Below are positions 16,811 to 41,253 of a stretch of 64,000 nt of DNA, in pieces. A program made the translations under genes and the position numbers. The stretch comes from Squalus acanthias (lineage: Eukaryota). The stretch is from contig CM059430.1 in the NCBI GenBank assembly GCA_030390025.1, positions 73,842,001 through 73,906,000 of the forward strand, given 5' to 3'. Within the stretch, counting starts at the first letter, position 1, and each line of letters opens with the position of its first letter. A model generated the notes under the pieces. That model did no database searches and was not told where the DNA came from. It worked only from the letters and a program-made list of their open reading frames with translations.

Positions 16811-17002
16811 TCAGCAGTAGATTCTCTTGTCACATTTATTTGTTATATGACTGTTCCTCCCGACCACCCTTTTCTGGTTTTTGAACTGAACCTGCCCGTA
16901 CACTATGGTCTCCTCTTGCCGTTTCGGTTTTGTATATGTCTTCTGACCGACGAAATCTAGCGCACAGGAAGTCAGCCTTTCATCAGCTACCATTTGCGGA
17001 AT
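16811..17002 (-). CDS. Cytoplasmic terminal exon B with ITIM IVYGQV (IPQMVADERLTSCALDFVGQKTYTKPKRQEETIVYGQVQFKNQ...RIYC*)
   Basis: Acceptor ttctacag| (phase 0), in frame with the exon A donor. ITIM at 16889-16906, stop at 16811-16813, minus-strand AATAAA at 16411-16416. Aligns without gaps to exon A. Confidence 0.62.
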   Translation of the reverse strand: MPQMVADERLTSCALDFVGQKTYTKPKRQEETIVYGQVQFKNQKRVVGRNSHITNKCDKRIYC

Positions 17003-17410
17003 CTGTAGAACAGTTCAGAAATAGCGTTAATATTCTGTCTTCATAAGCCTGCGGATTCCTACCTCAAACAAACTCGGATATTACTGCATAGGATGAGGCA
17101 AATGCGACATGCGAGAACCTACCACAACTTCTCTCACCATCCTGAAGCGACTCAAGCATACCCTGCTGCACCTCAAACCTGAGCCACGTTACCACATTCA
17201 CCTGAACATACATGGGGATATATGTTATGTATAGCCGATTATGATAGTGAAATAACAACATAAACTTCAGCCATAAATTTTCGTGTAAGTATGAAACTGT
17301 TTCCAGCAGCAGAAGTATCGCTAAACAGATTTAAGGTAATTGGCAAAAGAGCCAGAGTTGAGATAAGGAGATTTTTTTTAACACAGTAAGTTATTATGAT
17401 CTGGAATATA

Positions 17411-18043
17411 TTGGCCCATATTGTCTGATCGCAGGTCTCCCGCGGGCGGAGGCCTGCGATCTGGATGAATCTGAGCCCTTACCTGAGGGCTCCCCGGACG
17501 CGCACAGTTCCGATGCTGGGACTCACCAAATTCCAAGAGCGCAGGGCCCACGTATGCCAGAGGCGCATGTGGTTCGCAGCGTCACTGGGATCACGTGGGC
17601 CATGGGGAACCAATCACGTAAGGGAATCTCCCTCCATACATTTGACCTGTCAAATATATGAATGAAGATCAATGAAAAAACATGGTAAAATTAAAAAAAA
17701 TATATTTTTAAATCACTTTCTTAAAAGTAATTGAAATTACAATAAATTAAGTTTAAAATAAAGTATTTTAAAAACTGCTTTTCTTCTCTTATCCTGGTAA
17801 AAGCAGGCCTTACACCTGCTTTTCCCAGGCGGAAGAATTGTAAGTGTTTTCTGCGGGCGGAGGGTCTCCAAAAAGCGGAACTATCCGCCCGCAGATGCCC
17901 TTCTCCAGGGCAGCCGGAGGGTCTGTCAAGAGGATTCTTGACAGAGCGCATGCGTTGTGCGTGCCTGAAAGCTGCATTTGCGATGTCCTACGGGTGGGTG
18001 CACAGTGTGTAGCCACACGGAGTGCTCGGAATATCCGGCCCAT
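17411..18043 (+). mobile_element. Non-autonomous TIR element (MITE family) inserted in a CR1 3' fragment
   Basis: Imperfect TIRs, GC-rich arms and AT-rich core; clear similarity to 32252-32985. CR1 sequence resumes on both sides. Confidence 0.7.
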
Positions 18044-18671
18044 TGTCTGAAGCAGTGGTGGAAGCAGATTCGACAGTACATTTCAAAAGGAAATTAGCTA
18101 TGCGCTTGAAAAGGAAAATGCTATCAGGGTTATGGAGAAAGTGAAAGGGAGTTTGAATAATTTGATAGCTTTCCAAAGAGATGGCACAGGTACGATAGGT
18201 CGAAAAATTCTTCTGTGTTGAAAGATTCTATGACTCTATGATATGCCTGTTAACAAGGAGCACATGCAAAGTCTAACATAAGTGTAATGCTCGAATGCAA
18301 TACCAGTGTGAGACAGCAAATAAGTTTAAGGGGATATTTAATAACGGCTTTCAAGATCATAAAGTGTTGTGTTGCAGTAAATAAGGAGACTTTCTTTCCA
18401 ATCAGAGAATAATTGGTAACAGGTGGACACAGATATGAAGTAATTCTCAAAAGAGTCGAAGTTGAGATGATGAAAAAAATGTTATGCAGCAACTTATTAT
18501 GAACTGGAATGCACTGCCTGAAAGAGTAGTGGAAAGAGATTCACTAGTAACTTTAAAAACGAATTTTAGTAAATATTTATTTTGAGAAAATTTCAGGACT
18601 GTGGGGAAACAGCAGAGGAGTGAGACTGGTTACATAGCATTTACAAAGAGCCGACCCAGGTGGGAAGGACC

Positions 18672-21600
18672 AAATAAGAACACAGGAAATAGGAGCAGGG
18701 GTAGGCCATTCGGCCCCTCGAGCATCCTCCACCATTCAATAAGATCATGATTGATCTGATCTTGGCCTCAACTGCAAATTCCTGCCTGCTCCCATAACCC
18801 TTGACTCCACCGTTTCCCAAATATCTGTCTATCTCCGTCTTAAATATATTCAAAGACTTAGCCTCCACAGCTCTCTGGGGTAGAACATTCCAAAGATTCA
18901 CGACCTCTGAGAGTAGAAATTCATCTTCATCTCCGTTTTAAATGGGCGAACCTTTTTCTGAAACTATGCCCCTCGTTCTAGATTCCTCCACGAGGGGAAA
19001 CTTTCTCACAGCATGCAACCTGCCATGCCCCCTCAGGTTCTTATATGTTTCAATAAGATTATCTCATTCATCTAAATTCGAATGAGTATAGGCCTAACCT
19101 GCTCAACCTTTCCTCATAAGACAACCATATCAACTCAGGAATCACAGCAGTGTACCTTCTCTGAACTGTCTCCAATGCAAGTATATCCTTCCTTGAATAA
19201 GGAGACCAAAACTATATGTAGTACTCCAGGTGTGGTCTCACCAACACCTTGTACAAGTGCAGCAAGAATGTCCTACTTTTATACTCCGTCCCCCTTGCAA
19301 TAAAGGCAAACATTCCAATTGCCTTCCCAATTATTTGCTGTACCGGCATGCTAACTTTTTGTGTTTCATGTACGAGGACACCCATATCCCTCTGTACCGC
19401 AGCATTCTGTAGTCTCTCACCGTTAAAATAATATTTTGATTTTTATTCTTCCTACCAAAGTGGATAACCTCACATTTTCCCACAATACACTACATCTGCC
19501 AGATTTTTGCCCACTCACTTAACCTATCTATATCCCTTTGCTGATTATTTGTGTTCTCCTAATAACTTGCTTTCCCACCTATCTTTGAATAATCAGTAAA
19601 ATTGGCAACAGTGCGCTCGGTCCATTCATCCATGTCATTAATATATTTGTAAATAGTTAAGACCCCAGCACTGATCCCTGTGGTACATCACTAGTTACAG
19701 TTTGCCGAACAGAAATTGACCCATTTATCCCGACACTCTGCTTTCTGTTAGTTGGCCATTGCTCTATCCATTTAAATATATTACCCCCATTACCGTGAGC
19801 CCTTATCTTGTGCAGTTGCATTTTATGTGACACCTTATCGAAAGCCTTCTGGAAATCCAAATACACTACATCTACTGGTTCCCCTGTATCCCCTCCTGCT
19901 CGTTACATCCTCAAAGAACTCTAGTACGTTTGGCAAAAAAGATTTTCCTTTTATAAAACCATTTGACTCTACTTGATTGTATTATGATTTTCTAAATGTA
20001 CTGCTACTACTTCCATAATAATGGATTCCATCATTTTCCCAAAGACAGATGTGAGGCTTACTGGCCCATAGTTTCCTGCGTTCTGTCGCCCTCCTTTCTT
20101 GAATAGAGGCGTTACATTTGCGGTTGTTCAATCCGTTGGGACCTTTCCAGAATCCAGGGAATTTTGGTAGATTACAACCAATGCATCCACTGTCTCTGCA
20201 GCCACTTTGTTTAAGAACCTAGGATGCAGGCCAGCCGGTCCAGGGATCTTGTCAGACTTTATTCCCATTAGTTTGACTAGTACTTTTTCACTAGTGTTAG
20301 TGATTGTTTTAAGTTCCTCCTTCACTTTTTCCCCTTGATTATCTACTATTATTGGTATGCTTTTAGTGTCTTCTACTGTGAAGACAGATACAAAATATAT
20401 GTTCAATATCTCTACCATTTCCCTGTTTCCAATTATAAATTCCCCAGTCTCATGCTCTAAGGGACCAACGTTTACTTTAGCTACTCTCTTAATTTTATAT
20501 ACCTGCAGAAGCGCTAACTGTCTGTTTTTATAATTCTTGCTAGTTTACTCTCTTAATCTATCTTCATCCTCTTTATTTTTTTTTAGTCATCCTTCGCAGG
20601 TTTCTAAAGATTTCCCAATCCTCTGGCCTACCACTAATCGTTGCAACATTGTATGCCTTTTCTTTCAATTTGATACCATTCTTAACTTTCTTAGTAAGCC
20701 ACGGCTGGTTCATCCTTCTCGTAGATTCTTTCCTTCTCACTGGAATATACCTTTGCTGAGAGTTATGAAATATGCGCTCAAATGAGTGCCACTGCTTATC
20801 TACCGTCTACACTTTAACATATTTCCCAGTCCATTTTCGCCAACACTCATCATACCTTTGTAATTGCCTTTATTTTAGTTTACGACACTATTTTCAGACC
20901 CAAGTTTCTCACCCTCAAACTGAAAGGGAAATTCTATAATGCTAAGATCACTCTTCCCTAGAGTATCCTTTACTATCTGATAATTAATTAATCCTGCCTC
21001 ATTGCACATTAGCAGATCTAAAATAACCTGCTACCTGGTTGTTTCCCCTCCAAAAAGTGTTGTTCTAAGAAACCATCCTGAATACACTCTATGAACTCGT
21101 ACTCAAGTCTAGCTTTGCCAATTTGATAGCCTATATGCAGATTGAAATCGCCCATGAATTTGCAGTACCTTTCTTACAAGCCCCCATTATTTCTTGATTT
21201 ATATACTGCCCTATTGTGTAGCTAATGCTAGGGGACCTATAGAGTATTCCCAGCAGTGGCTTCTTTCCCTTACTATTGCTTATTTACACCCAAACTGCTT
21301 CTCCAACTTGATCTTCCGAGCCAATATAATTTGTCACTAATGTACTGGTGTCATCATTTATTAACAGAGCTATCCCACTTCCTTTTCCTTGCTGTCTATT
21401 CTTCCCAAATGTTAAATACCCCTGAATATTTAGTTCCCAGCTTAGGTCTCCTTGCAACCACGTTTCTGTAATGGCTTTCAGATCATACCCATTTATATAT
21501 ATTTGTGCCCTCAATTCATCTATCTTTTTACGAATGCTGCGCGCATTCAGATAAAGAACCTTTAATGTTTTACCATTTCCCCCCTACTCTTAACCGATTT

Positions 21601-21790
21601 GCCAGTGCAGTCTTATGTTTGTACATTCTGTCCATTCCTCTCAGACTCTGGTTATCATTACCCCCATTCACTATCCTGCATTATTATCTCGTCCTTTCTC
21701 TTTAACTTGCTAAAGTTCCCCCACCAGAATCCTCCCCCTACTATTTGGTACAAAGCCTGTCTACAGCCCTAGTTATTCGACGAATGGTCT
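18672..21790 (-). mobile_element. Decayed CR1 LINE (EN-RT)
   Basis: AITETWL, YLDFQKAFDKV and VPQGSVLG on the minus strand; 3' tail near 18675. Confidence 0.9.
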
Positions 21791-23306
21791 CCTTCTGTTC
21801 TGTTAGTTTAAATGATTCTATGTAATTATGTGATAAGTCTGTTGAAGACCACATGAAGAATCTAACTGAAGTATATGTCGCGTATGCCATACCAGTGTGC
21901 AATAGCGGATCTTGACAGCTGTTTCAGCAGTGGAATTTTTTACACATTTGGATTGATTTAATTCATTGCGCCCAGCGATTGCTTTATGAACGAACACTAT
22001 ACGGTTAGCGGTAGGGAAGAAATCTCATTTAGCTCAAAATTGCGATCAAGCTGTGCTTCACACGGAGACCTGGGAGTGTGAACATATCAGGCTTTTTCTC
22101 TCATTGGTGCCGAAGTCAACATTCTCAAATCGGCATTAATAAGGCAATAATAGCCTCAAAATGGAGTTGGCAGTCTTACCGCCCTTATAAACAGACTGGC
22201 TGGACAGAGCTCCTGTGTACTTAGGTGCTAGATCCTTTTAAGATGCAAATCGTAGTCGTATAACGTACAGAGGACCCTTATTGCCATTTTAGGAACTAAC
22301 AGTGTGGAGCTTGTGCCCTGCACTCGCCAACCACGTTTACTGGCTAAACGGCAAATGTTTCTCCAAAAAGGACGGATTGCTCTTCCTGGGTCTATAAAAA
22401 ACAATCTATGACGCTGATCCTCAACTTTCCGCTTCAGAATCGCAACCTCCACTCCAGGACTTACATTGCTGCGATGGGTATTTTCCGCCTACCTCTCTGA
22501 TAATACACCATCCTGAATCCGGTCTAAATGCATCGACATGTCTCTCTAGGGCGAGCAAAGCGCCGTTTCTATTAAAATGAAGCCAAAGCATTAAAATGGC
22601 TCCGGGTTTTTTCCTGCCGGTTTGGGCCGTCCGCTGACACAAAGGTTAAAGATTACCCCAAAGAGTGCACGAACGAATATACAGTAAATTGGTGTTGGAA
22701 ACAGTTGGAGAAGGCAATGGGTGACTTTTGTCTAAGTGCACGCCTGTCAGTTCAGTGTTTAAGAGTCGCAAAATTATGTTAGACACACATCGGGGCAAAG
22801 GTAATTTAGTATTTTATCTTAACCATAGGTAAAATCTAAATCTCACTGTGAATATGCTAGCCTATTCCGTCATTATTTTACAAAAATATAACCGGTTGTA
22901 GTTTTCCAATTGGCTTAATCACCGTAATTGCTGATCAGTCCACATTTTGGAATATGAGAGAGATGGTGTTTGGACACACGAACGATAACAGAATCGATGG
23001 GGGTGAAAGATGCAAAACGGTTGAAGTGTTACGATGTAATTGCGTTGTGCCGCAATACGAATTTCACGCTTTTATTCTAAAACAACGGGGAATAAATTGG
23101 TCTGGGGTGTACTCTTACTGTACAAGAATAGCAGTCTGTTACAACTAAGTAAATCATTATATACGTTGCAGATTCGGCGGCTACAAGCAATGCAGGAAAA
23201 AAATACTTCAACCACACATTGGTTTAAAAATATCTGAAATTGTGTTACATATATATGGTATATATGCATGAAATATTGTTACATTTAGGTATGGAATTAT
23301 CAATAC

Positions 23307-23417
23307 CTCCGCGTGCACTTCGTTCGTTTTCATCTGCTTGGGGTTTGAACGCTTCTTGGGGTCAGTAAACTTCACAGTTGCATAGGTGAGTTGTTCATCT
23401 GTGACGCCTTCCTGAAC
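23307..23417 (-). CDS. Cytoplasmic exon A with ITIM LTYATV (VQEGVTDEQLTYATVKFTDPKKRSNPKQMKTNEVHAE)
   Basis: ITIM consensus at 23373-23390. Acceptor ttgcag| is phase 0; alternative phase-1 AG acceptors give exon starts at 23425 or 23428. The exon either uses donor GAG|gtattg or reads through to a stop at 23208 with AATAAA at 23071-23076. The exact link to the TM exon is uncertain (candidate micro-exons 23691-23719 and 23503-23515). Confidence 0.7.
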
Positions 23418-24189
23418 CTGCAACTCTACTTGCACAACGTTCATTATATTATAGGACAGATTGAGATCGGTTGTAGAATTTAAATTGAATCGTGATACTT
23501 ACCGGGGTTCCATTTCTAAAATTCAATAGTGTTTAATTAATTGCTGAGCATAAATCGTTTTTATATATATTTCTACTTTGATACTCTCACATCGATGTAA
23601 GTTACACTTTTTCTCAATGCAGAATTGCTAATGACTGCCAACTAGAATGTTATATTTGTATTGGTAGCATAATTTAATTAAAAAATGCACCTCTCTCCGT
23701 AGTGCCCGTATGTCGTTGACTACTCATTAAAAGGTCACGTTAACTCGCTCCCATTTCGGTGCATTATTCGTCTTATTATGAAAAAAACAGTAGAAATTTT
23801 ACTCTTTTGGACTGCTTCATGTAGATTATTTTCTCTGTCGCGAATTTCATTTTCAACGGTATAACAGGAGGATTATACATCCGCACATGAAAACCGTCAT
23901 TGGCCTCCCTGATTCTGTAACCTTCTCCAACGTTGCAGCCTCTGAGAACTCTGTCTTTCTCCAACTCTGATTTATTTTGCATCCCGTATTCATTTACCAC
24001 ATGGCTGACATCTGTGCCTTTAGCCCATTAACCCTAACCTCTGGAATTCAGTGATTGATCAATCGGTTTCTACACCACCCTTTGCTCCTTTAAAACTATC
24101 CTTGAACCCGCCTCTTTGATCAAGGTACTGGGAAGCTCTCTCCTTAACGCCAACATTTGCACCATGTCAATTCTTGACTGGCTAAGCGA

Positions 24190-26040
24190 ATTGAATCATA
24201 GAAACAAAGATTCATGCAGCACAGGATGACGCCAGTCTGTCCATCGTGCCGGCTCTTTGGTAGATCTATTCATTTAGTTCTACTCCCACCCTCTTTCCCA
24301 ATAGCCCTGTTATATTTTCCCCTTCAACTGTTTGTCCAATTCCCTTTTGAAAGTTTCTGTTGAATTTGATTTCAACACCCTTTCAGTCAGTAGATTCCAA
24401 ATCACAACAACTCGCTTGTTTCCTCATGGCGCCTCTGTTTCATTTGCATATCACCATAAATCTATGCACTCTGATTACCGACCCTTACGCCACTTAAACA
24501 GTTTCTGCTTATTTACTGTATCAAAACCATTCCTGAAAGTGCAAAGCTCTATCAAACCTCCTCTTAATCTTCTCTGCTTCAAGGAGAACAAACAGGCTTG
24601 CGCAGCCTCTCTAAGGCCTTCATAGCCTTGCTAAAGTGTACTGCCCAGAATTGAACACAATACTCAGGCTGAGGCCTAAGCAGTGTTTCTTACAACTTCC
24701 TTGCTTTTGTACTCTATGCCTTCTCAACTTATGTTGGCACCTTCAACTATTTGTCTACAAGCACGCTAGGTCTCCATGCTCCTGTAAACATTTAAAATGT
24801 ATGATTTATTGTAAACTGCCTCTCCGCATTCTTTGTACCAAGATGTATCACTTCACACTTCTCTGCATGAAATTTCAGCTGCCATGTTTCTGCCCATTTT
24901 AATACCCTTCTTATCTCCTCACGAAATCGGTTACTATTATTATGTTTATTTGTTACATTTCGGAGCTTCCTGTCATGTGCAAACTAAGAAATTATGGCAT
25001 ATTTTCGATGTTCAAGGCCATTTATATATGTCAAAAAAGCAGTTGTCCTTAATACCGACCACTGGGGAACACCATTTTATTCTTCTCTCTGCAACACTAT
25101 CCTCTGCATGCTGTCCCTTGGCCAGTTTCGTATCCATATTGCCATTGTCCCTTAAATTACATGGGCGTTAAATGTGCTAACAAGTCTAATATGTGTTAGT
25201 TTGTCAAATGCCTTTTGGAAGTTAATATACACAACATCAACCACACAACCCTCATCAACGCTTTCTATCACTTCAACAAAGAAGTCGATAGAACTCGTTA
25301 AAAACGATTTCCCTTTAACAAATCCGTGATGATTTTTATTAGCCAATATATTTTTCAATGCCAATTCAGTTCGTCCGGGATTGCACTCTCTAAAAGTTTC
25401 CCCACCATAGATATTAGGCTAACTGACCTGTAATATCAGGGTTTATAACTCTCCCCTTTTTTAGGCAGCTGTGTAACGTTTGCAATCCTCCTGTACTCTG
25501 GCATCGCCTCACTTCGAAGGAGAATTTGGCGATATTGGCCAAAGCCTTGGCAATTTCCACCCTGACTAGAATGTCTATCATCCGGAGTCCGTGAATTTTC
25601 TACTTTGAGGACTGGCCCCCGTTTAAGTATCTTCTGTTTATGTATTTTAATCCTCCTCAATATCGCTGCTACTTTATCCGTTCGTGCTACATTGCAGCAT
25701 TCTATTCTCCAGTGAAGAGACGGTAAATTTCTAATTTTATAACTCAGTCATGCCCTCTGCCTGCAGAGGAATTTTTCCTTTTGGCTCCTCATCGGTCTCA
25801 CCCTTCTGCTGACTTACCTATTACTACTGATATATTTATAAACTGCATTTGTGTTCACTTTTAATTCAGCCGCTAATCTATTCACATTGCCTGTTTTTTA
25901 GATCTCCTCTGCCCTCATCAACCCTTTCCGTTTCTTCAACAAAAAACTCAGTCAAGTTAATCGGATACGATTTGCCTTAAAGAAATCAGTGCTGACTTTC
26001 GTTTATTAGCCCATACTTTTCAAAAAGCCAATGAAGCTTC
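24190..26040 (-). mobile_element. Old, heavily decayed CR1 LINE fragments
   Basis: HHGFVKGKS and VYINFQKAFDKL remnants. Confidence 0.75.
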
Positions 26041-27209: not shown

Positions 27210-27323
27210 CTCTTAATCTAGGCAATTTAAATAGTTTCAATATAGTGACCACCGATAGTAGAATTAACAGTCCAATTCCGAGACAGAGAAACATGTACAA
27301 GAGTGGAAAGCCACTGTCGATAT
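27210..27323 (-). CDS. Exon 4: transmembrane exon (DIDSGFPLLYMFLCLGIGLLILLSVVTILKLFKLPRLR)
   Basis: Acceptor tattttgcag|, donor G|gtaaga, 114 nt, phase 1-1. An uncharged hydrophobic stretch of ~23 aa is followed by basic residues. Confidence 0.82.
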
Positions 27324-31429: not shown

Positions 31430-32195
31430 TGGCACAGAAATTCGGATTTCCCGCTTCCTGCGGGTGCAAGCATCGCGCGCGTACTTGCCCACCGCACCTA
31501 CAGTTGTGCTTTGGGCCCACCAGGACTTCGGGTCCTCGGGCTCCTCCAGCTGCCGGCGCACAGTGCTTGTGTATCCCAGGGGCGCAGTTAGTTCGAAGCG
31601 TCCCCTGGGGTCATGTGGGCCATGGAGAGCCAATCCGAGCAGGGCATTTTCATTCATAGATTTGACAGTAAGACCTGTTAAAATCTATGAATAGAGTTCG
31701 GCCCCAAAACCACACTTAAACCTCAAAAAATAATTTTTTAAATCACATTTTTAATATAACGTTAAGATGAATAAATTAAGTACTTTAAACAATAGTTTAA
31801 ATTTTTGAAAAAATTAATTATACTTTTTAACGGTGCTAAAAATAAACCTACATTTTTTAAAAGTATCTAAAAAAGATAAAGCTGTTGAAAATTTGTCTTA
31901 ATTGTAATTAATTAACCGCTTACCTTGTTAAAAACAGATCTTGCGCTTCCTTTTTAAAAGCGCAGCTTCTTCATACTCACCCTCCCGGAGGAACCTGAAA
32001 AAAAAACTGAAGTTCGCTGCATGCGCGCACCTCTCCCCTGCACGTGGTTCACCTCTGAACCCCTCCCTTCAGGGTAACGGAAGTTCCGGTTTCCCGCACA
32101 TGCGCAGTGCATGCAGGAATCCGGCACTTCCGATGTAGTTGCGAGTGAGCACACAGCTCGTACTCACCCGACAACAGCCGATATTCTGGCCCAAT
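31430..32195 (+). mobile_element. MITE family copy
   Basis: Ends tggcacagaaattcgg / ccgatattctggccca; homologous in reverse orientation to 60335-61089. Confidence 0.7.
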
Positions 32196-32251
32196 ATATT
32201 TAAAATGGAATTGTTTATAAACGGCCACATTTGTGACTGCGCAGAATAATA

Positions 32252-32985
32252 ATGGCCCGTATTTTCTGATCGCAGGCCTCCTTCGGGCGGAGGCCTGTGA
32301 TCTGGGAAAATCTGCGCCATTACCTGAGGGCTCCGGGACGCGTAGAATTCCGATGCTGGGCCTCTCCAAACTCCAAGTGCGCAGTGCCCACGAATCCCAG
32401 AGATGCATGTCGTTCGCAGCATCCCTGGGATCACGTGGGCCATGGGGAGCCAATCACAGAAGGGAATCTCTCTTCATACATTTGACAGTAAGACCTGTCA
32501 TATATATGATGGCTATCAATAAAAAAACATAGTAAAATTTTAAAATATTTTTTTTTAAATCATATTTTTAAAATGACTTGAAATTACAATAAATTCATTG
32601 AAAAAAATCATTTAAGTATTTTACGGGCCTAAAAATAAACTTACCTTTTTTAAAATTATTTTTCAGTGATAAATCAATGAAATTTTGTTTTTAAATTTCA
32701 ACTCTTGTCCTGGTAAAAGCTGGCCTTACGCCTGCTTTTGCCAGGTGTAAGAATTCTAAGGGTTTTCTGCGGTCGGAGGGTCTCCAAAAAGTGGAACTAA
32801 CAGCTCGCAGAGGCCCTTCTTAAGGGCAGCCGGAGGATCTGTCAAGATCAGAAATGCCGGTCTTCAGCGCATGCGCTGTGCATGCCTGAAACCGGCATTT
32901 CCGATGTCCCTACGGGGTGGGGGGGGGGGGGGGGGGGGTGTGCACAGCGCGTACCCACCCGCAGGGATCGGAATATCCCGCCCAA
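32252..32985 (+). mobile_element. MITE family copy with an internal poly-G tract
   Basis: Ends tggcccgtatttt / gaatatcccgccca; homologous to 17411-18043. Confidence 0.7.
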
Positions 32986-33583
32986 TGTTACAATCAGTCT
33001 TTTATTACGATATTCCAGCCATGCTACCAAAACGTGTGCAGATAATATATACTCTCTAAAAATCAATTTGATTGAAATGCTCTAATTCTGGGCATGGTGT
33101 ATCTACAATTAAGCTAATAAATGTTTCTATGGAAGAGAAACGTCTTCCTCATTTCGCAATATAATGAAAATAATGTAAACAAATACATCTATTACCACCC
33201 CTGTAGAACGATGCGCATGCATAGCTGTCCCGTTCTTCTGCTTTAACTTCTTCGGACGATCGCGTAAACATCGCAGAAATCGCATAAACCGCCATAGGCA
33301 TTCCAGCCTGACTTTTGCAGGACGAGTGCGGGCCTTTGGTGAGAGACAATAAAGCAGGATTCCTTCTTCTAATAACTGGAAAATGTCCTTGCTGTAAACT
33401 GCAGGGTGTGGATCATCTTTTACGTGTGGGGAATTGTCTCCTGAAATTCTTAAGGCTCGCACATGCTGACTGGAAACTCACACAGAACACACTGGGGCCG
33501 GCCGTCCATGGAGACGGATCTCAGCAGAATCAAAATTTTCAGCAAAGACTGAGAAAAACCCGAAAAACAAGCATGCCAATTAC

Positions 33584-33889
33584 CTGAAACGCCAATTTGG
33601 TAATGAACACTGGCTCCAGTCTGAAGAGAGATGTGTGATACCTTACAGGTATAATTAATTCCGGTGTGCAAAGGACCTGCTTCACTGAGATCACTGGAAA
33701 CTTCAAAGAGTCCGGCTGGATTACGTTTTGTGATTGTTTCCCTGCCGTTCGCGATTTCCAAACCATTTTTATACCAACTGATGTTCAGATTTTCCGGGAA
33801 AAACCAAGCCGTTTTACACTCAAGATTGAACGAAGTCGAAGAATGTCTTCTAAATCCAATGGTAGAAATCTGCAACGGCGTCGGAGGAA
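33584..33889 (-). CDS. Exon 3: C1-set Ig domain (VPPTPLQI...FNLECKTAWFFPENLNISWYKNG...GLFEVSSDL...NYTCKVSHISLQTGASVHYQIGVS)
   Basis: Acceptor tttttttaaag|, donor G|gtaatt, 306 nt, phase 1-1. Canonical C1 motifs: LxCxxxxFFP, IxWYKNG, FEVSSxL, YTCxVxHxSL. Confidence 0.9.
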
Positions 33890-35479
33890 CTTTAAAAAAA
33901 ATAGAAATAAAATGTTATTTAAATTTAATGGGGGCGAAATTGGTCTTGGAACGTTAGAAGTTTGCAATGCGTGGCTTCAATTTCCATTGACTGGATTCTA
34001 TGATACTATGAGTGTTTCTGATCTCTCACCATAACCTCGGCTGAAAATCCCTCGCCCGAGATCTTCTTAGAAATTCTAGGGCACATGAGTTGGGTTTCTG
34101 ATAGCTCAATCCAGTTTGTTCCATTGCCGTTCTTATGAGTTTGAAGGTGTCTTCTTCAAATGTTTTGTTCTCTTTTAAAAGCGAGTATGGAAATTCTCTC
34201 ATCATTCTATCTGGTGGTGCAGTTCATAGTCTGACCACCTTCTGTTAAAAAATACATTCCAACTTGGTCCAATATTTAAATTAGTTACCTTTAGTTATGA
34301 ACTTACTGGGCAGTGTCTTTTTTTACTATTTACTTTGACAGAACACTTTATAATTTAATACACCTGGAACAGATCTCGTGTTAACTTTCACTGATCAAGG
34401 GAATAAGGGCACAGTTTCTCTCGTCTCTTCTCATTACCTTACCATCTCGTTCCTTTTACGATTTTAGTGAAATACTTTTCAACCCTCTGAATAACATTTG
34501 CATCCTCCCCAAACTAATGCCCTGAAACCAGTTGACTAACTAGGGTTTACCCAGTGAATTGTATATGTTCACTCAGGCAATTGTATTCCTATTGTATTAT
34601 TCCATATAATCAAACCTTACTCCCTGAAATTCCGTAGGAGTTCGATTGATTTCCCGCATTTTTCCTGCAGGGCACGGGCAGTGAAACTTTGCCAAGGACG
34701 AGTTTATGTCATTTAGACCTTTCTCTATGGAATTAGCCAGGCCTCCTACCGGCGTTACGGTTTGAGATCCGGGAAATTTCGGCAGAAGTCGGGGCCTACG
34801 ATACAATTTGCTGTTTTTACATCTTTGGTTATTCTTAAACTTTGCATCCGAACTTGGAAATGGATTCACTCTGCATCTGCATATCATTTGCTTTTAATTC
34901 ATTCTAGGGATGTGAGCGTCGTTGGCACGAGCAGTATTTATTCCCATCCTTGGTTGACCTATGGCAGTGGTGGTGAGCGGTTTCATACAACTGTGAGGCT
35001 TCCGAAATGCTTCAGAGGACAATTGAGAATTAACCATGTTGGGGTTGGAGAAAAGTCGCATATAGTGCAGAATGGTTAAGGAAGGCAAGTTTCTTTCCCT
35101 GAAGGATATTAGTGAAGAAATTGGGTTTTGATGGCAATCCACTTATACCAGCATTTATTTCCATATATTTTCGAATAAGTTAAAATTTTTAAACTGCCAA
35201 ATTGGGAGTTGAACGCACATTCCCTCTATTACTAGTCCAGGCTCTAGATTCGTAGAACAGTTAAATAACAACTACTTCACAGTGTTGGTACATGACGGAG
35301 GGAGAGAGCGATCCTAACCTAGCAACAGTCGAGGGAGCGAGAAAGAATTACAGATCACCCAAGCAACAGCCAGTTTTCAAGATTGAATTAAAGCCTTGCG
35401 ATGTTTATAGTATTGCCATACTTTAAACATCCCACCACATACCATTGCAACCGACGGGAAAGGATGTTGATGCACGAGA

Positions 35480-37195
35480 ACTGTAAAGTTGTGTGGCCCA
35501 ACCAGTCCACATCCACCACCACCCTCCTCCGCCTGGCTGAACTTGTTCTCACATTGAACAAATTCTCTTTGACTCCACCCATTTCCTCCAAATCAAAGTT
35601 GTTGCTATGGGTACCCGCATGGGTCCAAGCTATGCCTGCCTTTTCGTTGGATATGTGGAACACTCTTTGCTCCAATCCTACTCACGATCCATCCGTCACC
35701 TCTTTTTCTGGTACATTGATGACTGTATCGGTGCCGTCTCCTGCTCTCCCCCTGAACTAGAACATTTCCTTCACTGTGCTTCCAATTTCCATACTTCCCT
35801 CAACTTCACATGGTCCATCTTCGAATCTTCCCTTCCCTTCCTCAACTTCTCCGTCTCCATCTCTGGGGATAGGTTATTGACTAACATTCACTACAAGCCC
35901 ACTGGCTCCCACAGCTACCTGGAATACACTTCTTGCCAACCCGCCTCCTTTTAGGACTCTATTCAATTCTCCCAGATTTTCCGTGTTCGCTGCATCTGCT
36001 CTGACGATGCCACATTCCATACCGGTGCTTCCGACATGTCTTCCTTTTTCCTCAACCGAGGATTCCCCTCTACTGTGATGAACACGGCCTTCGACCGTGT
36101 CCGTTCTATCTCCCGCACTTCTGCCCTCACCCCTGCCCCTCCCTCCAGGAACCACGATAGAGTTCCCATTGCCCTCATCTTTCACCCCACCAGCCTCCAC
36201 ATTCAACGGATCATCCTCCGCCATTTCCGCCACCTCCAGTGTGATCCCACCACCAAACGCATCGTCCCCTCACCTCCCCTTTCAGCATTCTGCAGGGACC
36301 GCTTCCTCCGCGACAACCTAGTCCACTCCTCCACCACCCCCAGCACCCCTTCCCCTTCGCCCGGCACCTTCCCGTGCAAGCACAGGAGATGCAACACATG
36401 CCCATCTACCTCCCCTCTTCCCACTGTCCAGGGCCCCAAACACCCCTTTCGGGTGAAACAGCGATTTACTTGTACTTCCACAATTTAGTATACTGTATTC
36501 GCTGCTCACGATGTGGTCTCCTCTACATTGGGGAGACCAAACTCAGATTGGGTGACCGCTTTGCGGAACACCTCCATTCAGTCCGTAAGGGGGACCCCGA
36601 GCTCCCAGTGGCCTATCACTTTAATTCTCCGCTCCACTCACTCTCTGACCTCACCGTCCTCGGCCTATTACACTGTTCCACGGAAGCTCAGCGTAAGCTC
36701 GAGGAACAGCACCTCATCTTTCGTTTAGGCAACCTACAGCCCTCCGGACTCAACATCGAGTTCAACAATTTTAGATCATAACCTCAGCCCCTATCACATC
36801 TTTATTTTATTTTTTCATCCACCCTTTTGTTTGCCCCCCACTTTTTTTTCCCTCCCAGAAGCTGGCAGCTGCCCTTCATTCTGCCAGTGCATTTCACACT
36901 TCATTTAGCCTCAACCTGTCACATTAACACCTCCTCTTGACTTAATTATCTCTTAATGGCTCTCGATGTCTCAAAATCGCTCCTTTTGTTCTTTCATCCC
37001 CTCCCCCTTTTCCCAGCATTATACTTGCTTTAAATCTACATAATTTCCTGATTTTTTCCACTTTTGACGAAAGGTCTTCGACGTGAAACGTTAACTCTGT
37101 TTCTCTCTCCACGGATGCTGCCTGGCCTGCTGACTTTGTCCAACGTTGCTGTTGTTATTTCGGATTTCCAGCATCCGCAGTATTTTGCTATCGTA
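35480..37195 (+). mobile_element. Penelope-like retroelement (RT C-terminus plus GIY-YIG endonuclease plus 3' terminal repeat), 5'-truncated and decayed
   Basis: AMGTRMGPSYACLF and WYIDDC RT motifs; LVYCIRCSRCGLLYIGET...RFAEH...QPSGLNIEF GIY-YIG motif. Terminal repeat carries a degenerate hammerhead at ~37059-37096. Confidence 0.9.
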
Positions 37196-37976
37196 CATTT
37201 TATTGGACTTGTTCTCACCAATCTCCTAATATATTGATATTCTCAGGAAGTTGTGTTCAGTCTTCTAGATAGTGAACCCCCTGTTTGGTGAGCTCTATCA
37301 ATTTTCATGGTGTGCCCCTGCAACAGGTGTTCTCCCAATTTTGACCGGAGTAATTAAATTCCACATTGTGACTGTTGTCTGGGCCCGGTAATTCCACAGG
37401 GCTGCCGCATTGTCTGACAACAATGGAAAAGTAAATCAAACGGGAAGTATAATTGACTGCACATCCGTCACCGTACGCAAAATGGTCGTTTGATAATTCG
37501 CCAGATTTTCCATTTCTTTGAAGTCAATAGGAAAGAAAATGGAGCGGAGTAAATTAAAATTAGCGGATGCCTTGTCCTGAGCTTGGCGCTGCCGCTCAAG
37601 CCGGCATTTACTGTTGTGTTGGTAATAAATAGTTAAATACATATTGACAAGTGGCTAGAGCTAATTAATAAACTGCTTTACTGCTGTAACCATTCTACCT
37701 TTTAATGAATTGTTTTCAGTGTATTGTTTATTATTTTGGGGTCTCACTCATTTGGCATGTTTGGCTCCGTACCCGCATTTCCTGCGTTTGTTCAGCTGTA
37801 GGTGATCCGCAGATGGCTTTATGGGTGGATTACCGTACGTCTGCTTTAAACTCCGCGGAAGAGCCGCCGAAAACCCGAGAATAAAACAGTGTTCCTTGCA
37901 TAATTTTTTCATTGAAAACTCTCATATAATTGGTTGGTTCACGAGTTTCTATTACAGAATCCAGGCTATGGAAGTA

Positions 37977-38480
37977 TTGGCCCAAAATTTGCGATCGGAG
38001 GCTTCCCGCGACCCGATGGCCCGGAAGGTATGGAGAATTGCGATCCTGGGCCACTCGAGACACGCGCGAGCAGAGGCCCACGTATCCCAAGGGCGCATGC
38101 GGTTCGCCCGCGCCCCTGGGATCACGTCGCTCGTCCTAAAGAATAAAAGAAGGGAATAGCCATTCATAATTATGGGAGTTCTGTACGTACGGGAATGCCA
38201 TAAGTATGAATGGGGAATCAGTTAAAAAATACACGAAAACATGAAATAAAAAATAAATTGCATCTTTAAAATTAATTAAAATGCCTAGTAATTAAATATT
38301 TTAACAAAAAATATATATTTTTAAACGGAATTTAACAAGTTTTAACGGGGCTAAAATAAATTACCTTATTGGACAGGTGTTTTAATGTAGAAATGAGTGA
38401 TTACATTTTATTTTTCTATTTGGTATAACTCTTATGCTGGTAAAAGCAGGCCTTAAAAGCAGGATTTACTTTCCCACGTA
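37977..38480 (+). mobile_element. MITE family copy (partial)
   Basis: Starts ttggcccaaaatttgcgatcggaggcttcccgcg, matching the reverse complement of the 61089 end. Confidence 0.6.
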
Positions 38481-38585
38481 CAAACTGGATAACTGTCAAT
38501 CTGTTGCATGTGATTAGATTCTGAGTTCCGCAGCAGTTTAAGGGCGATCTGATTTAAATTTATAGAGAATGATACTGCGAATATT

Positions 38586-38918
38586 TATACTGTTGCTTGA
38601 GTAGATCCGTCAGATCTGTTTACCTTAATTGTCTCTCTGTCTCTCTGTATATATACTGTTGCTTGAGTAGATCGGTCAGATNNNNNNNNNNNNNNNNNNN
38701 NNNNNNNNNNNNNNNNNNNNNNNNNNNNNNNNNNNNNNNNNNNNNNNNNNNNNNNNNNNNNNNNNNNNNNNNNNNNNNNNNNNNNNNNNNNNNNNNNNNN
38801 NNNNNNNNNNNNNNNNNNNNNNNNNNNNNNNNNNNNNNNNNNNNNNNNNNNNNNNNNNNNNNNNNNNNNNNNNNNNNNNNNNNNNNNNNNNNNNNNNNNN
38901 NNNNNNNNNNNNNNNNNN
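38586..38918. repeat. 66-bp tandem repeat running into a 237-N assembly gap (38682-38918)
   Basis: tatactgttgcttgagtagatc(c/g)gtcagat occurs at 38586 and 38652. Confidence 0.7.
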
Positions 38919-38939
38919 CCAGTTATCTTTTATTATCTC

Positions 38940-40640
38940 TGAGCGTTTGCAACTACCTTCAGCCAGACGTGCCGAGTGGATGATCCATATCGGCCTCCCC
39001 CTGAGGTCCCCACCATCACAGAAACCAGTCATCAGCCAATTCGATTCACTCCCCGTGAGATCAAGAAACGGCTGAGTGCATTGGATACAGCAAAGGCTTG
39101 GTGCCCAGTCAACATCCCGGCTGTCGTGCTGAAGACATGTGCTCCAGAACCAGCTGCGCCTCTGGCCAAGCTGTTCCAGTACAGCTACAAAACTGGAATC
39201 TAACCGACAATGTGGAAAGCTGCCCAGGTCTGAACTGTCCACAAAAAGCATGACTAATCCAACCCGTCCAATTACCACCCCATCAGTCTGCTATCAATCA
39301 TTAGCGATGTGATGGAAGTTGTCATTGACATTGTTATCAAGCGGCACTTAATGACTGAGAACCTGCTCACTGATGCCCAGTTTGGGTTCCGCCAGGACAA
39401 TTCGGCTCAAAACATCATTACAGCCTTGATCCAAACATGGACAAAGGAGCTGAATTCCAGAGTTTAATTGAGAGTGAATGCCCTTCACTTCAAGGCAGCA
39501 TTTGACCGAGTGTGGCCTCAACGTGCCGTAGTAAAACAGAAGTCAATGGGAATCGGGGAGAAAACTGTCCACTGGCTGAGGTCGTATCGAGCAAAAAGAA
39601 AGAGGATTGTGGTGTTTGCTGGTCAATAATCACAGCCCAAGGACATCGCTGCCGAGTTCCTCAGGGCAGTGTCCTAGGCGCAAACATATTGAGCGGCTTC
39701 ATCAATGAACTTCCCTCCATCATCAGTTGGAAAATGGGGATGTTTGCTGATGACTGCACAGTGTTCAGTGCCATTCGCAACTCTTCAGATAATGAAGCAG
39801 TCCAGCCCCACATGCAACAAGACCTGGACGACATTCAGACTTGGGATGATAAGTGGCAGGTCACATTTGCGCCAAACAAGTGCAAGGCAATGACTGTCTC
39901 CAACAAGAGAGTCTAACCACCTCCCCGTGATATTCAGCTGCATTACCATAGCCGAATCCCCCACTATCATGATTCTGGGAGCTCACAATTGACCAGAAAC
40001 TTAACTGGAAAAGCTACATAAATACTGTGTCAACAAGCGCTGGTATGAGGCTATTTATTCTGCGACGAGTGTCTCTTCCCATGTCTCCCCAAATCCTTTC
40101 CACCATCTACAAGGCACAAGTAAGGAGTGTCATGGAATACTCTTCACTTGCCTGGATGACTGCAGCTCCAACAACACTCAAGAAGCTCGACACCATCCAC
40201 GATAAAGCAGTCCGCTTGATTAATACCCCAGACACCACCTCAAACTTTAACTCCCTCACCACCGGCCAACCGTGGCTGCAGTGTGTTCCATCTACAAGCT
40301 GCACTGCAACAACTCGCCAACGCTCCTTCGGCAGCATCTCCCAAACCCGGGATCTCTACCAGCTTGAAGGACAAGGGCAGCAGGAGCATGGGAATACCAC
40401 CACCTCCAAGTTCCACTCCAAGTCACACACAATCCTGATTGGAGGTATATCGCCGTTCATTCATGTCACTGTGTCAAAATCCTGGAATTCCCTCTATAAC
40501 AGCACTGTGGGAGTACCTTCACTGCACGGACTGCAGCGTTTCAAGAAGGCGGCTCACCAACACGTTCTCAAGGGCAATTAGCGATGGGCAATAAATGTTG
40601 GCCTTATTGGAGTTGCCCAGATGCCAGGAAAGAATATAAA
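38940..40640 (+). mobile_element. Family B LINE 3' portion
   Basis: VPQGSVLG, MFADDC and IYKAQVRSVMEY motifs; the 3' end lies ~45 bp from the V-exon donor. Confidence 0.88.
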
Positions 40641-40683
40641 AAAGTATATTATTACATTTAGAATTGTATGACACGCCACTTAC

Positions 40684-41004
40684 CATATACAACGAGTTCT
40701 GTGCCGCATCCATCAACAACCTTGTAATGCCGAGATATAACTCTACAGCGATAGAATCCAGAGTCGTTGAAACTCACATTATGAAGATGTAGAAAAAATG
40801 TTCCATTGTCTAGAGGACGCGATTCGGTGCGTTCGTCGAAGGTTATTGTGACATTTAAATTGGAATTGTGCTTCATCCAAAAAATACGTTCAATTTCGTT
40901 GTTCTTGAGGCCAGGCACATTTCCTAGTAAGGTAACATTTTTCCCTCTAATCACCGAAACTGAGTTAGGGAAGGGATGGACATTTGTGGGAACACTTTGG
41001 CTAG
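40684..41004 (-). CDS. Exon 2: V-set Ig domain with germline-joined J-like motif (ASQSVPTNVHPFPNSVSVIRGKNVTLLGNV...IFWMK...FFLHLHNVSFNDSGFYRCRV...DGCGTELVVY)
   Basis: Acceptor ttccaacag|, donor G|gtaagt, 321 nt, phase 1-1. Shows C-strand Trp, E-strand LxLxNV, DSGxYxC and G-strand GxGTxLVV. Lies within ORF 40658..41290. Confidence 0.88.
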
Positions 41005-41186
41005 CTGTTGGAAATAGATATTGCAGCACAATATTTACTTTGAACACAATAGGTAGAGAATTGTTTAATAACAGAACAAACCACAATACGGCAATATAAA
41101 TGTGACAATTAATGAACAATATTTGTATTTTTGTCGACAACTCTCTACTGCAGAACCGGAACTTTTTAATAAAATCGGTCAAATAC

Positions 41187-41253
41187 CTGTGCAGATAATC
41201 CCCATTGTGGCACAATACATAAATACGATATTCCGAACCAGAGCGAAACCCAT
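41187..41253 (-). CDS. Exon 1 (signal peptide) of a V(J)-C1-TM-ITIM Ig-superfamily receptor: MGFALVRNIVFMYCATMGIICT
   Basis: ATG at 41253, then 22 mostly hydrophobic codons plus 1 nt, then donor ACAG|gtattt (phase 1). A 182-nt intron leads to the V exon in frame (G+CT=Ala). Confidence 0.75.

What the first reader, a model, noticed from the sequence alone, without database searches (positions are those of the whole stretch)
16811..41253. Hidden non-rearranging VJ-C1 antigen-receptor-like inhibitory receptor gene spread over ~24 kb of repeats
Seen: leader, V, C1 and TM exons (67, 321, 306 and 114 nt) have GT-AG sites and phase-1 junctions that splice into one open frame. The V exon already contains a J-type GxGTxLVV strand, with no intervening RSS. 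Two downstream exons carry ITIMs and the TM has no charged residue. Established: C1-set domains are largely restricted to Ig/TCR/MHC, tapasin, SIRP and some B7 proteins. A V-with-J-motif plus C1 plus ITIM layout is SIRP-like and resembles the proposed pre-RAG ancestor of antigen receptors. Inference: this is a lineage-specific, probably uncharacterised inhibitory immune receptor of a cartilaginous fish, likely one member of a cluster.
Basis: partly seen in the sequence, partly recalled or inferred. Interest (0 to 1): 0.85.

Follow-up and report, generated by a model that had tools for sequence, protein, structure and literature searches.

The report
Shark SIRP-like inhibitory receptor gene
This is a real but ordinary-in-kind immune receptor gene of a shark-like fish, an unannotated and unusual member of a large family of inhibitory receptors that public databases already list under automatic names, and its outermost (V) domain may not be used.

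Summary
The exons are there as described, on the minus strand: leader 41253-41187, V 41004-40684, C1 33889-33584 and TM 27323-27210, plus two cytoplasmic exons. All have AG/GT sites and compatible phases, Pfam calls V-set and C1-set, and there is no RSS.

The gene is not a lone novelty. It is a divergent, unannotated member of a multigene V-C1-TM-ITIM family. That family is already predicted in 16 cartilaginous-fish species under inconsistent automatic names (SIRP-alpha-like, tapasin-related-like, Ig-lambda-like). I found no paper describing it.

Its closest relative, Heterodontus francisci XP_067905014.1, matches the leader, C1, TM and both tail exons in order. This ties the two sides of the N gap (38682-38918, inside an intron) to one gene. 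That relative has no V domain.

The V exon here is intact, but it is the oddest V in the family. It has Gly in place of the canonical first Cys, a CD79b-like Cys in the J motif, and the longest branch in the tree. The only transcript-like contig leaves the leader at its donor and does not enter V.

Only two of four ancestral tyrosine motifs survive.

First-stage notes report the same kind of gene elsewhere in this genome; I did not check them.

The parts
41187..41253 (-). Leader exon (67 nt): ATG at 41253, donor GT at 41186-85, ends in phase 1. It encodes a hydrophobic signal peptide.
   Evidence: Read and translated. It shares 12 of 21 residues with the N-terminus of P0189 (XP_067905014.1). 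A 188-nt contig from run X1 matches 41187-41281 with 1 mismatch and stops exactly at this donor.
40684..41004 (-). V exon with its own J strand (321 nt, phase 1 in and out). It is non-rearranging. Gly replaces the canonical first Cys, and a Cys sits in the J motif (DGCGTELVV).
   Evidence: Pfam V-set, E 4.1e-11. It keeps 13 of 16 conserved family columns; the three changes are Q10P, C27G and V40I. The AF2 model has pLDDT 83, and its best Foldseek matches are shark VNAR and TCR V-alpha domains. CD79b (3kho_B) is the best single-domain sequence hit and includes the xCGTELxV motif. No RSS was found. Three small runs gave zero coverage of this exon.
38682..38918 (.). Assembly gap (237 N) inside the V-to-C1 intron.
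   Evidence: It abuts no exon. The leader on its right and the C1, TM and tail exons on its left match one H. francisci protein in order. The gap was not filled or looked up.
33584..33889 (-). C1-set exon (306 nt, phase 1 in and out). It begins with the family's VPPTP motif.
   Evidence: Pfam C1-set, E 1.8e-8. It is 56% identical over 101 residues to P0189. It keeps 21 of 22 conserved family columns. In the tree it pairs with P0189 at 90/94 support. The AF2 model has pLDDT 82.4, and its best Foldseek matches are MHC class II beta-2 and Ig light-chain constant domains.
27210..27323 (-). Transmembrane exon (114 nt, phase 1 in and out). The membrane span is uncharged and is followed by basic stop-transfer residues.
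   Evidence: Read. BLASTP against P0118 gives E 1e-4 and against P0189 E 4e-6. Its length equals that of the TM exon inferred from H. francisci isoforms.
23307..23428 (-). Cytoplasmic exon a. It has a tandem acceptor, giving a start at 23428 (122 nt) or 23425 (119 nt), enters in phase 1 and leaves in phase 0. It carries the ITIM LTYATV. Its second motif has His in place of Tyr.
   Evidence: Read. It shares 20 of 40 residues with P0189, and the His is shared too. The junctions match the P0189 protein.
16811..17002 (-). Cytoplasmic exon b (phase 0, stop TGA at 16813-16811). Its first motif has lost the Tyr (LTSCAL). Its second is the ITIM IVYGQV.
   Evidence: Read. It shares 32 of 54 residues with P0189, which keeps the Tyr (LTYCAL). 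Exons a and b are weakly similar to each other.

Best explanation
The locus is a genuine, apparently intact gene of a cartilaginous fish. It belongs to a large chondrichthyan family of non-rearranging, SIRP-like receptors. Family members share a split leader, a single-exon V with a J strand, one C1 domain, an uncharged TM, and a tail built from two duplicated units that each carry two tyrosine motifs.

**Shown:**

- The leader, C1, TM and both tail exons form one gene.
- Its nearest annotated relative is Heterodontus francisci XP_067905014.1.

**Inferred mechanism:** the protein is a type I membrane receptor. After tyrosine phosphorylation, its two surviving ITIMs (LTYATV and IVYGQV, about 60 residues apart) would recruit SH2-domain phosphatases of the SHP-1/SHP-2 type and dampen activation of the cell that carries it.

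**The V exon:** it sits in the canonical place, 182 nt after the leader, and is open with good splice sites. But it is the family's most aberrant V. The available evidence suggests that at least one main transcript joins the leader directly to C1, which is in frame and collinear with the H. francisci protein. I therefore read V as either alternatively included or recently retired.

**If V is included (speculative):** the J-motif cysteine, which aligns with the same cysteine of CD79b, could make a disulfide-linked dimer.
For: **Gene structure.** The exon anatomy and phases were read directly. Pfam gives V-set and C1-set above their cutoffs.

**Family membership.**
- The V and C1 exons hit the same shark and ray proteins in the right order, and VPPTP opens the C1 exon in every case.
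- The family has 40 hits and 58 of 60 hits from cartilaginous fishes.

**Nearest relative.** Every exon except V matches P0189. The TM|exon a and exon a|exon b junctions fall at the same places as in P0189. The C1 exon pairs with P0189 in the tree at 90/94 support.

**Doubt about V.**
- P0189 has no V.
- The X1 contig matches 41187-41281 and ends at the GT donor. Its other 93 nt lie on neither the intron nor the V exon.
- Cys23 is Gly, against 30 of 30 Cys in the family.
- The V terminal branch is 1.78, against a median of 0.37.
- The ratio of V identity to C1 identity is the lowest of 23.

**SIRP-likeness.** The family profile scores 62.5 bits against SIRP-alpha d1-d2 and 44.8 bits against d3.

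**J-motif cysteine.** The alignment to CD79b is.
Against: **Signs that V is still in use.**
- The V exon is fully open over 107 codons.
- It has a consensus GTAAGT donor and a reasonable acceptor.
- It keeps 13 of 16 conserved columns.
- It folds confidently in AF2.
- An exon left unused for the length of its branch (1.78 changes per site) should have collected stop codons. My rough estimate is about 10 expected.

Selection must therefore have acted on it until recently.

**Weakness of the transcript evidence.**
- It is one contig at depth 3.9, in a small run whose RNA status is only a guess.
- It could come from a paralogue.
- The other 93 nt of that contig could not be placed.

**Weakness of the comparison with P0189.**
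- P0189 could be a paralogue, a minor isoform or an incomplete model.
- I could not inspect its locus.

**No functional data.** Nothing shows expression of the C1, TM or tail exons in this species. ITIM function is inferred from the motifs alone.
Confidence: 0.6

Rival explanations
1. The V exon is always spliced in, and the product is a V(J)-C1-TM-ITIM receptor. The odd V (no Cys23, extra J-motif Cys) is a functional, fast-evolving ligand-binding domain.
For: The V exon has an intact ORF, intact splice sites and a compatible phase. It sits in the canonical split-leader position. It scores as V-set at E 4.1e-11. The AF2 model is confident and its fold matches are antigen-receptor V domains. 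Most family members do have a V.
Against: The nearest relative has no V. The only contig touching the leader does not enter V, and V has zero coverage in three runs. Cys23 is lost here alone among 31 aligned V domains.
Confidence: 0.25
2. The whole gene is a recently inactivated, unexpressed relic. It decays slowly inside a repeat-rich region and has already lost two of four tyrosine motifs and the V-domain disulfide.
For: The Tyr to Ser change in exon b is specific to this window, and Tyr to His in exon a is an older loss. Cys23 is lost. The acceptor of exon a is weak, and a stronger out-of-frame acceptor lies 8-11 nt downstream of it. No gene model exists in the collections searched. Introns are packed with LINE fragments.
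Against: All six exons are open with usable AG/GT sites. C1 keeps 21 of 22 conserved columns. A contig covering the 5' UTR and leader, ending at the splice donor, suggests transcription and splicing.
Confidence: 0.1
3. The scaffold is misjoined at the N gap. The leader and V on one side, and C1, TM and the tail on the other, belong to two different family members.
For: The gap flanks are unrelated repeats, so continuity cannot be read from the sequence. V leans weakly towards one family clade (90/78) while C1 sits in the other (99/99).
Against: The leader on the right of the gap and the C1, TM and tail exons on the left all match the same single H. francisci protein, in order and orientation. 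The position of V between the clades is unresolved and conflicts with neither. There are no spare V or C1 exons in the window.
Confidence: 0.04

Closest known systems
Heterodontus francisci XP_067905014.1 (P0189; automatic name 'tyrosine-protein phosphatase non-receptor type substrate 1-like', 252 aa)
   Same: The leader (12 of 21 residues), C1 (56% over 101), TM, tail exon a (20 of 40) and tail exon b (32 of 54) all match in order, with junctions at the same places. The His in the second tail motif is shared. It is the sister of the window's C1 in the tree.
   Different: It has no V domain; the leader runs straight into VPPTP. It keeps the tyrosine of the third motif (LTYCAL), which the window has lost (LTSCAL).
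The chondrichthyan V-C1-TM-ITIM family under mixed automatic names, for example XP_067905923.1 (H. francisci 'tapasin-related-like'), XP_038661939.1 (S. canicula 'SIRP-alpha-like') and XP_007902902.2 (Callorhinchus milii)
   Same: Same architecture and exon logic: split leader, single-exon V with a G-x-G-T-x-L J strand, a C1 exon opening with VPPTP, a 38-codon TM exon, and a tail of two units each with two tyrosine motifs.
   Different: The window's V is only 23-37% identical to family V domains, against 36-58% for C1. It lacks the Cys that is invariant in the family and has a Cys inside the J motif. Only 2 of 4 tail tyrosines remain.
SIRP-alpha (PDB 2wng) and the SIRP paired-receptor family
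   Same: It has a V with a J-like strand followed by C1-set domains, an uncharged TM and an ITIM tail. The family profile hits 2wng at E 6.4e-30, with 62.5 bits for V-C1 and 44.8 bits for the third domain, including a shared VPPT linker. From memory, and not tested here, SIRP-alpha also has a tail with four tyrosines.
   Different: There is one C1 domain here, not two. The ectodomain similarity is no greater than to Ig light chains (64.2 and 60.9 bits for V-C units). No tetrapod SIRP appeared in the profile search, although that search is limited by its word index. CD47 binding and synteny were not testable.
UrIg2 / UrIg, non-rearranging shark VJ-C1 genes (PDB 9dmx; PMC12227049, sections 4 and 7 read)
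   Same: They have a non-rearranging single-exon VJ with a split leader followed by C1-type domains, and they are found in elasmobranchs. 9dmx is the best PDB hit of the window's C1 exon, at E 3.5e-17 summed over three domains and 29.6 bits for the best domain.
   Different: According to the paper, UrIg has three C domains and is secreted, and UrIg2 has nine or more C domains. Neither ITIM nor SIRP occurs anywhere in that text. The window's V exon does not list 9dmx among its 60 best PDB hits.
CD79b (Ig-beta; PDB 3kho, 8e4c)
   Same: It is the best single-domain PDB sequence match to the F-G part of the V exon (23.9 bits), with the same x-C-G-T-E-L-x-V motif. From memory, and not tested here, that cysteine in CD79b makes the disulfide to CD79a.
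   Different: CD79b has no C1 domain and, from memory, signals through an ITAM. The rest of the family has Asn or Thr, not Cys, at that position, so the resemblance is probably convergent.

Membership tests
Chondrichthyan V-C1-TM-ITIM ('SIRP-like') multigene family | Split leader followed by a single-exon V that ends in a G-x-G-T-x-L-x-V J strand | tested here: met
   The leader is 67 nt, the intron is 182 nt, and the V exon ends in DGCGTELVVY. It aligns with 30 family V domains.
Chondrichthyan V-C1-TM-ITIM ('SIRP-like') multigene family | Invariant V-domain core: Cys23, Trp41, D-x-G-x-Y-x-C | tested here: inconclusive
   Trp, Asp, Gly, Tyr and the second Cys are kept. The first Cys is Gly, against 30 of 30 Cys in the other members.
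Chondrichthyan V-C1-TM-ITIM ('SIRP-like') multigene family | One C1-set domain whose exon opens with VPPTP | tested here: met
   Pfam C1-set, E 1.8e-8. It keeps 21 of 22 conserved columns. It lies inside the family tree next to P0189.
Chondrichthyan V-C1-TM-ITIM ('SIRP-like') multigene family | A 38-codon TM exon and a tail of two units, each with two tyrosine motifs | tested here: met
   The TM exon is 114 nt, the same size as in H. francisci isoforms. Tail exons a and b match P0189. Only 2 of the 4 tyrosines are kept.
SIRP family (SIRP-alpha type) | Ectodomain of V-C1-C1 (three Ig domains) | tested here: not met
   There is only one C1 exon between V and TM, and no further C1-like exon in the window.
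SIRP family (SIRP-alpha type) | Significant, specific sequence similarity to SIRP | tested here: inconclusive
   The family profile hits 2wng at E 6.4e-30, but IgA1/lambda-type and kappa V-C units score the same. No tetrapod SIRP appeared among the 60 hits.
SIRP family (SIRP-alpha type) | Cytoplasmic ITIMs that recruit SHP-1/SHP-2 | not testable with these tools
   The motifs LTYATV and IVYGQV fit the ITIM consensus. Binding needs a bench test.
SIRP family (SIRP-alpha type) | CD47 binding and conserved synteny | not testable with these tools
   No neighbouring non-repeat genes lie in the window.
Rearranging antigen receptors (IgL / TCR) | V and J are separate segments flanked by RSS | tested here: not met
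   The J strand is inside the V exon. There is no RSS between 40300 and 41300. The window holds 1 RSS-like site, against 0.68 expected by chance.
UrIg / UrIg2 | VJ followed by three or more C1-type domains, with V and C closest to UrIg | tested here: not met
   There is one C1 exon only. C1 has its best PDB hit in 9dmx, but V does not. The family's features were taken from PMC12227049, sections 4 and 7.
CD79b | Single Ig domain, TM and an ITAM tail | tested here: not met
   A C1 exon is present and the tail motifs are of ITIM type. Only the J-motif cysteine is shared. The ITAM of CD79b is stated from memory.
PRARP (Fu et al. 2019, J Immunol, pmid 30770416) | Non-rearranging VJ IgSF genes first found in chicken. 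I recall the details only vaguely. | not tested
   The paper is not held. It is only cited in PMC10751288.

The most novel reading that the evidence does not exclude
The V exon is alive and alternatively spliced, so one gene makes both a C1-only and a VJ-C1 inhibitory receptor. The VJ form has given up the intradomain disulfide and gained a CD79b-like cysteine in the J strand. It would pair V to V through a disulfide, like an antigen-receptor dimer.

The family as a whole is undescribed in print as far as my searches reach. It would be the cartilaginous-fish counterpart of SIRP, and a third lineage of membrane-bound pre-RAG-type VJ-C1 genes beside UrIg and UrIg2. According to unchecked first-stage notes, other members lie among Ig light-chain clusters in this genome.
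Probability: 0.18. Interest if true: 0.7.

Novelty: new member of a known kind. Interest (0 to 1): 0.4.

Why it matters
Non-rearranging genes that combine a V domain with a built-in J strand and a C1 domain are the models for what the RAG transposon invaded when antigen receptors arose. Recent work presents UrIg and UrIg2 as the shark relics of that state (PMC12227049).

A membrane-bound VJ-C1 family with ITIM tails, present from chimaeras to sharks and rays, bears on that discussion and on the origin of SIRP-type paired receptors. It is so far known only through inconsistent automatic names.

This particular gene adds a small case study. It shows how such receptors decay or diversify through loss of the V disulfide, a new J-strand cysteine, loss of tail tyrosines and probable V skipping. 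It is one divergent member of the family, not the ancestor-like form itself.

Tried and rejected
**Checks that led nowhere or were rejected**

- **Missing exon between TM and exon a.** The obvious ttgcag acceptor gives the wrong phase, so I looked for a short extra exon. A scan of 167 candidate AG...GT exons between 27215 and 23300 found nothing resembling the acidic mini-exon of H. francisci. The problem disappeared once I saw the tandem acceptor at 23430-29 / 23427-26, which matches the P0189 junction.
- **Second V, C1 or TM exon in the window.** None was found at E below 0.5. Ten family proteins hit only the known exons.
- **Ig octamer ATGCAAAT upstream of the leader.** There are 5 in the window against 4.6 expected, and none is near 41253.
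- **V and C1 from different family clades.** In the best tree V sits between the two clades. Both groupings are already present in that tree, so no AU test was run and nothing is rejected.
- **Membership in CD79b or UrIg2.** Rejected; see the membership table.
- **Earlier findings searched by sequence.** Both look-ups were blank.

**Literature**

- Nine searches were answered. I saw only the listings and abstract openings.
- I read the outline, sections 4 and 7 and find passages of PMC12227049.
- I read find passages only of PMC11599192 and PMC10751288.
- None of these describes a shark V-C1-TM-ITIM family.
Table S1 and figures S1-S2 of PMC12227049 list genes around the shark Ig/TCR clusters and might name such genes.

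**The 150 listed hits**

I fetched only 10: the rows with a single stretch covering most of the query, plus two fragments. The other 140 were multi-Ig proteins matched in several short stretches. I did not examine them.

Full report
**Observation**

The gene lies on the minus strand. I read the sequence directly and translated each exon on its own.

| Exon | Coordinates | Length | Splice sites and phase |
|---|---|---|---|
| Leader | 41253-41187 | 67 nt | ATG start, GT donor, ends in phase 1 |
| V | 41004-40684 | 321 nt | AG acceptor, GTAAGT donor, phase 1 in and out |
| C1 | 33889-33584 | 306 nt | AG/GT, phase 1 in and out |
| TM | 27323-27210 | 114 nt | AG/GT, phase 1 in and out |

- The membrane span of the TM exon has no charged residue.
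- Pfam scores the V exon as V-set (E 4.1e-11) and the C1 exon as C1-set (E 1.8e-8). Both are above the curated cutoffs.
- The V exon ends in DGCGTELVVY, so the J-type strand is part of the exon.
- An RSS scan found nothing at or near the V exon. It found one site in the whole window, against 0.68 expected by chance.

All searches, folds and trees used single exons. The joined, spliced protein was never built.

**The tail exons**

- Exon b runs from 17002 to 16811, in phase 0, and ends in TGA.
- Exon a ends at 23307, in phase 0.
- The conspicuous ttgcag acceptor of exon a would put it out of frame with the TM exon and lead to an early stop.
- A weak tandem acceptor restores the frame, with AG at 23430-29 or at 23427-26.
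- The second of these acceptors gives a junction of exactly the length seen in the closest relative.
- A scan for an intervening mini-exon found none.
- The two tail exons are weakly similar to each other.

Each tail exon holds two tyrosine-motif positions:

| Exon | First motif | Second motif |
|---|---|---|
| a | LTYATV (tyrosine kept) | His in place of Tyr |
| b | LTSCAL (tyrosine lost) | IVYGQV (tyrosine kept) |

This agrees with the first-stage note s1-890715.

**The gap**

- The 237 N at 38682-38918 lie inside the V-to-C1 intron, far from any exon.
- The flanks are unrelated repeats: a short direct repeat on the left and a LINE fragment on the right.
- Indirect evidence is good. The leader, right of the gap, and the C1, TM and tail exons, left of it, all match one Heterodontus francisci protein in order and orientation.

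**What it belongs to**

- I ran a full phmmer search of the V exon against 1.84 billion representative proteins. It gave 187 hits at E up to 0.001.
- Most of the 150 listed were giant multi-Ig proteins matched in short pieces.
- The hits with a single stretch covering nearly the whole query were shark and ray proteins of 263-450 aa, at 29-39% identity. I fetched ten of them.
- They show a common plan: leader, V ending in NG-x-GTELIVH, VPPTP-C1, TM and a tail with ITIM motifs.
- Their automatic names disagree: SIRP-alpha-like, tapasin-related-like, Ig lambda-1 light chain-like, NCR3LG1-like and 'uncharacterized'.
- A search with one of them returned 40 proteins. A search with an 18-member profile returned 60.
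- In the profile search, 58 of the 60 are from cartilaginous fishes, and two weak hits are from teleosts.
- With the family covers 16 species, including the chimaera Callorhinchus milii.
- No protein encoded by this window appeared in any of these searches, so the gene is unannotated in those collections.
- H. francisci isoforms show that the V, C1, TM and tail-unit exons are each skipped in some models.

**Closest relative**

The C1 exon has a clearly nearest protein, P0189 = XP_067905014.1 of H. francisci.

| Window exon | Match to P0189 |
|---|---|
| Leader | 12 of 21 residues |
| C1 | 56% over 101 residues |
| TM | E 4e-6 |
| Tail exon a | 20 of 40, with the His shared |
| Tail exon b | 32 of 54 |

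- The window's C1 and P0189 pair in the tree at 90/94 support.
- P0189 keeps the tyrosine that the window has lost in exon b.
- P0189 has no V. Its leader runs directly into VPPTP.
- A search starting from P0189 found no closer V-bearing relative; it gave 4 hits.

**Is the V exon used?**

For use:

- It is open over 107 codons, with a consensus donor and a reasonable acceptor.
- It sits in the canonical position, 182 nt after the leader.
- It keeps 13 of 16 conserved family columns.
- Its AF2 model has pLDDT 83. The best structural matches are shark VNAR and TCR V-alpha domains.
- Its branch in the V tree is 1.78 changes per site. By my rough estimate, neutral drift over that length should have produced about ten stop codons. 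It was therefore under selection until recently.

Against use:

- It has Gly where all 30 other family V domains have the first Cys. It also has Pro at a position where 29 of 30 have Gln.
- It has the longest branch in the tree, 1.78 against a median of 0.37.
- It has the lowest V-to-C1 identity ratio of 23 members, 0.64 against a mean of 0.83.
- Its nearest relative lacks V.
- The read evidence points away from it, as set out next.

**The read evidence**

- Only three small runs of one study were found, and their RNA status is a guess.
- Laid on 40500-41500, they give no coverage of the V exon.
- One X1 contig of 188 nt has 95 nt that match 41187-41281 with one mismatch.
- That match ends exactly at the leader's GT donor. 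The other end, at 41281, is not preceded by AG.
- The remaining 93 nt lie on neither the intron nor the V exon.
- The simplest reading is a leader spliced to an exon outside the stretch I laid.
- A direct leader-to-C1 join is in frame and collinear with P0189.
- This is one contig at depth 3.9, and it could come from a paralogue.

I put V-skipped or alternative transcripts at about 70%. I put some remaining coding use of V at about 40-45%.

**Mechanism**

- Shown: the domain types, an uncharged TM, and two motifs that fit the ITIM consensus.
- Inferred: a type I membrane receptor. After phosphorylation, its ITIMs would recruit SHP-type phosphatases and inhibit the cell that carries it.
- The two motifs are about 60 residues apart, because the two motifs between them have lost their tyrosines.
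- The Cys in the J motif aligns with the same Cys of CD79b. CD79b is the best single-domain PDB hit for that region (23.9 bits).
- From memory, that cysteine makes the interchain disulfide of CD79. A disulfide-linked dimer here is therefore a hypothesis only.

**Comparison with known families**

- The family profile hits the following at similar levels: an IgA1 entry whose first part is a lambda-type V-C unit (3.9e-33), UrIg2 (5.8e-33), SIRP-alpha (6.4e-30), SIRP-gamma (1.2e-26) and CD276 (6.7e-22).
- Scores per V-C1 unit are 64.2 bits for the lambda-type unit, 62.5 for SIRP-alpha d1-d2, 60.9 for a kappa unit and 57.2 for UrIg2. SIRP-alpha d3 gives the best single C1 score, 44.8 bits.
- The C1 model matches MHC class II beta-2 and light-chain constant domains.
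- The family therefore works like SIRP and looks as much like an antigen-receptor chain as SIRP does.
- It fails the three-domain SIRP layout. Specific SIRP ancestry is not shown.
- It is not UrIg or UrIg2. Those have three or more C domains, and their paper never mentions ITIM or SIRP.
- PRARP (Fu et al. 2019) could not be compared because the paper is not held.

**Literature**

- Nine answered searches found no description of a shark V-C1-TM-ITIM family.
- Subscription journals and supplementary files were out of reach.

**Context**

- The rest of the window is LINE reverse-transcriptase and endonuclease debris, plus a weak GIY-YIG hit.
- There is no Ig light-chain gene and no second family member in the window.
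- First-stage notes, unchecked, report many genes of the same VJ-C1-TM-ITIM kind on other pieces of this genome. Some are said to lie among light-chain clusters. One is described as C1-only, and one is a relic 35 kb beyond this window.

**Verdict**

The gene is real and unannotated, but it is one divergent member of a family already visible in public protein sets. The use of its V domain is doubtful. Interest is moderate, and it attaches to the family more than to this gene.

Noticed in passing
window 40500-40605: A short interspersed repeat just downstream of the V exon draws very high summed contig depth (tens to hundreds of thousands) in all three runs, at 90-95% likeness. It is a highly repeated and probably transcribed element of this genome.
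   Followed up: no
window 35400-36800 (+): An ORF with a weak GIY-YIG nuclease hit (E 3.8e-4, just below the cutoff) lies in the V-to-C1 intron, next to ORFs that gave no Pfam hit. It may be a Penelope-like retroelement.
   Followed up: partly
window 146-6592, 14513-15547, 39512-40581, 42410-48341, 53087-53680: Many LINE fragments on both strands fill the introns and flanks. They include reverse transcriptase (RVT_1, E 7e-11 to 8e-7) and endonuclease (Exo_endo_phos_2, E 1.5e-10).
   Followed up: partly
window 23418-23431 (-): There are three AG acceptors within 13 nt at the start of tail exon a. Two form a tandem NAGNAG pair that keeps the frame. The third, which looks strongest (ttgcag), would truncate the protein just after the membrane, giving a form without a tail.
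   Followed up: partly
window 33583-33450 (-): The reading frame stays open for 44 codons past the C1 donor. It aligns weakly with the TM region of H. francisci proteins in tblastn. The stretch holds K, R, S and Q, so it is probably a chance match.
   Followed up: no
proteins P0099 (Mobula hypostoma), P0110 (H. francisci), P0185 (H. francisci): Some family members have very short tails without tyrosine motifs. P0099 has Arg residues within or beside its membrane span. This suggests activating or decoy partners, as in paired receptor families.
   Followed up: no
protein P0043 (Scyliorhinus canicula XP_038661939.1): This 450-aa model carries the TM-plus-tail block twice in tandem. It is either a recent internal duplication or a gene model that fuses two neighbouring genes.
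   Followed up: no
window 46440 (-): This is the only RSS-like site in the window: heptamer CACAGCG, a 24-nt spacer and a nonamer with two mismatches. It is at the chance level (1 found against 0.68 expected).
   Followed up: yes
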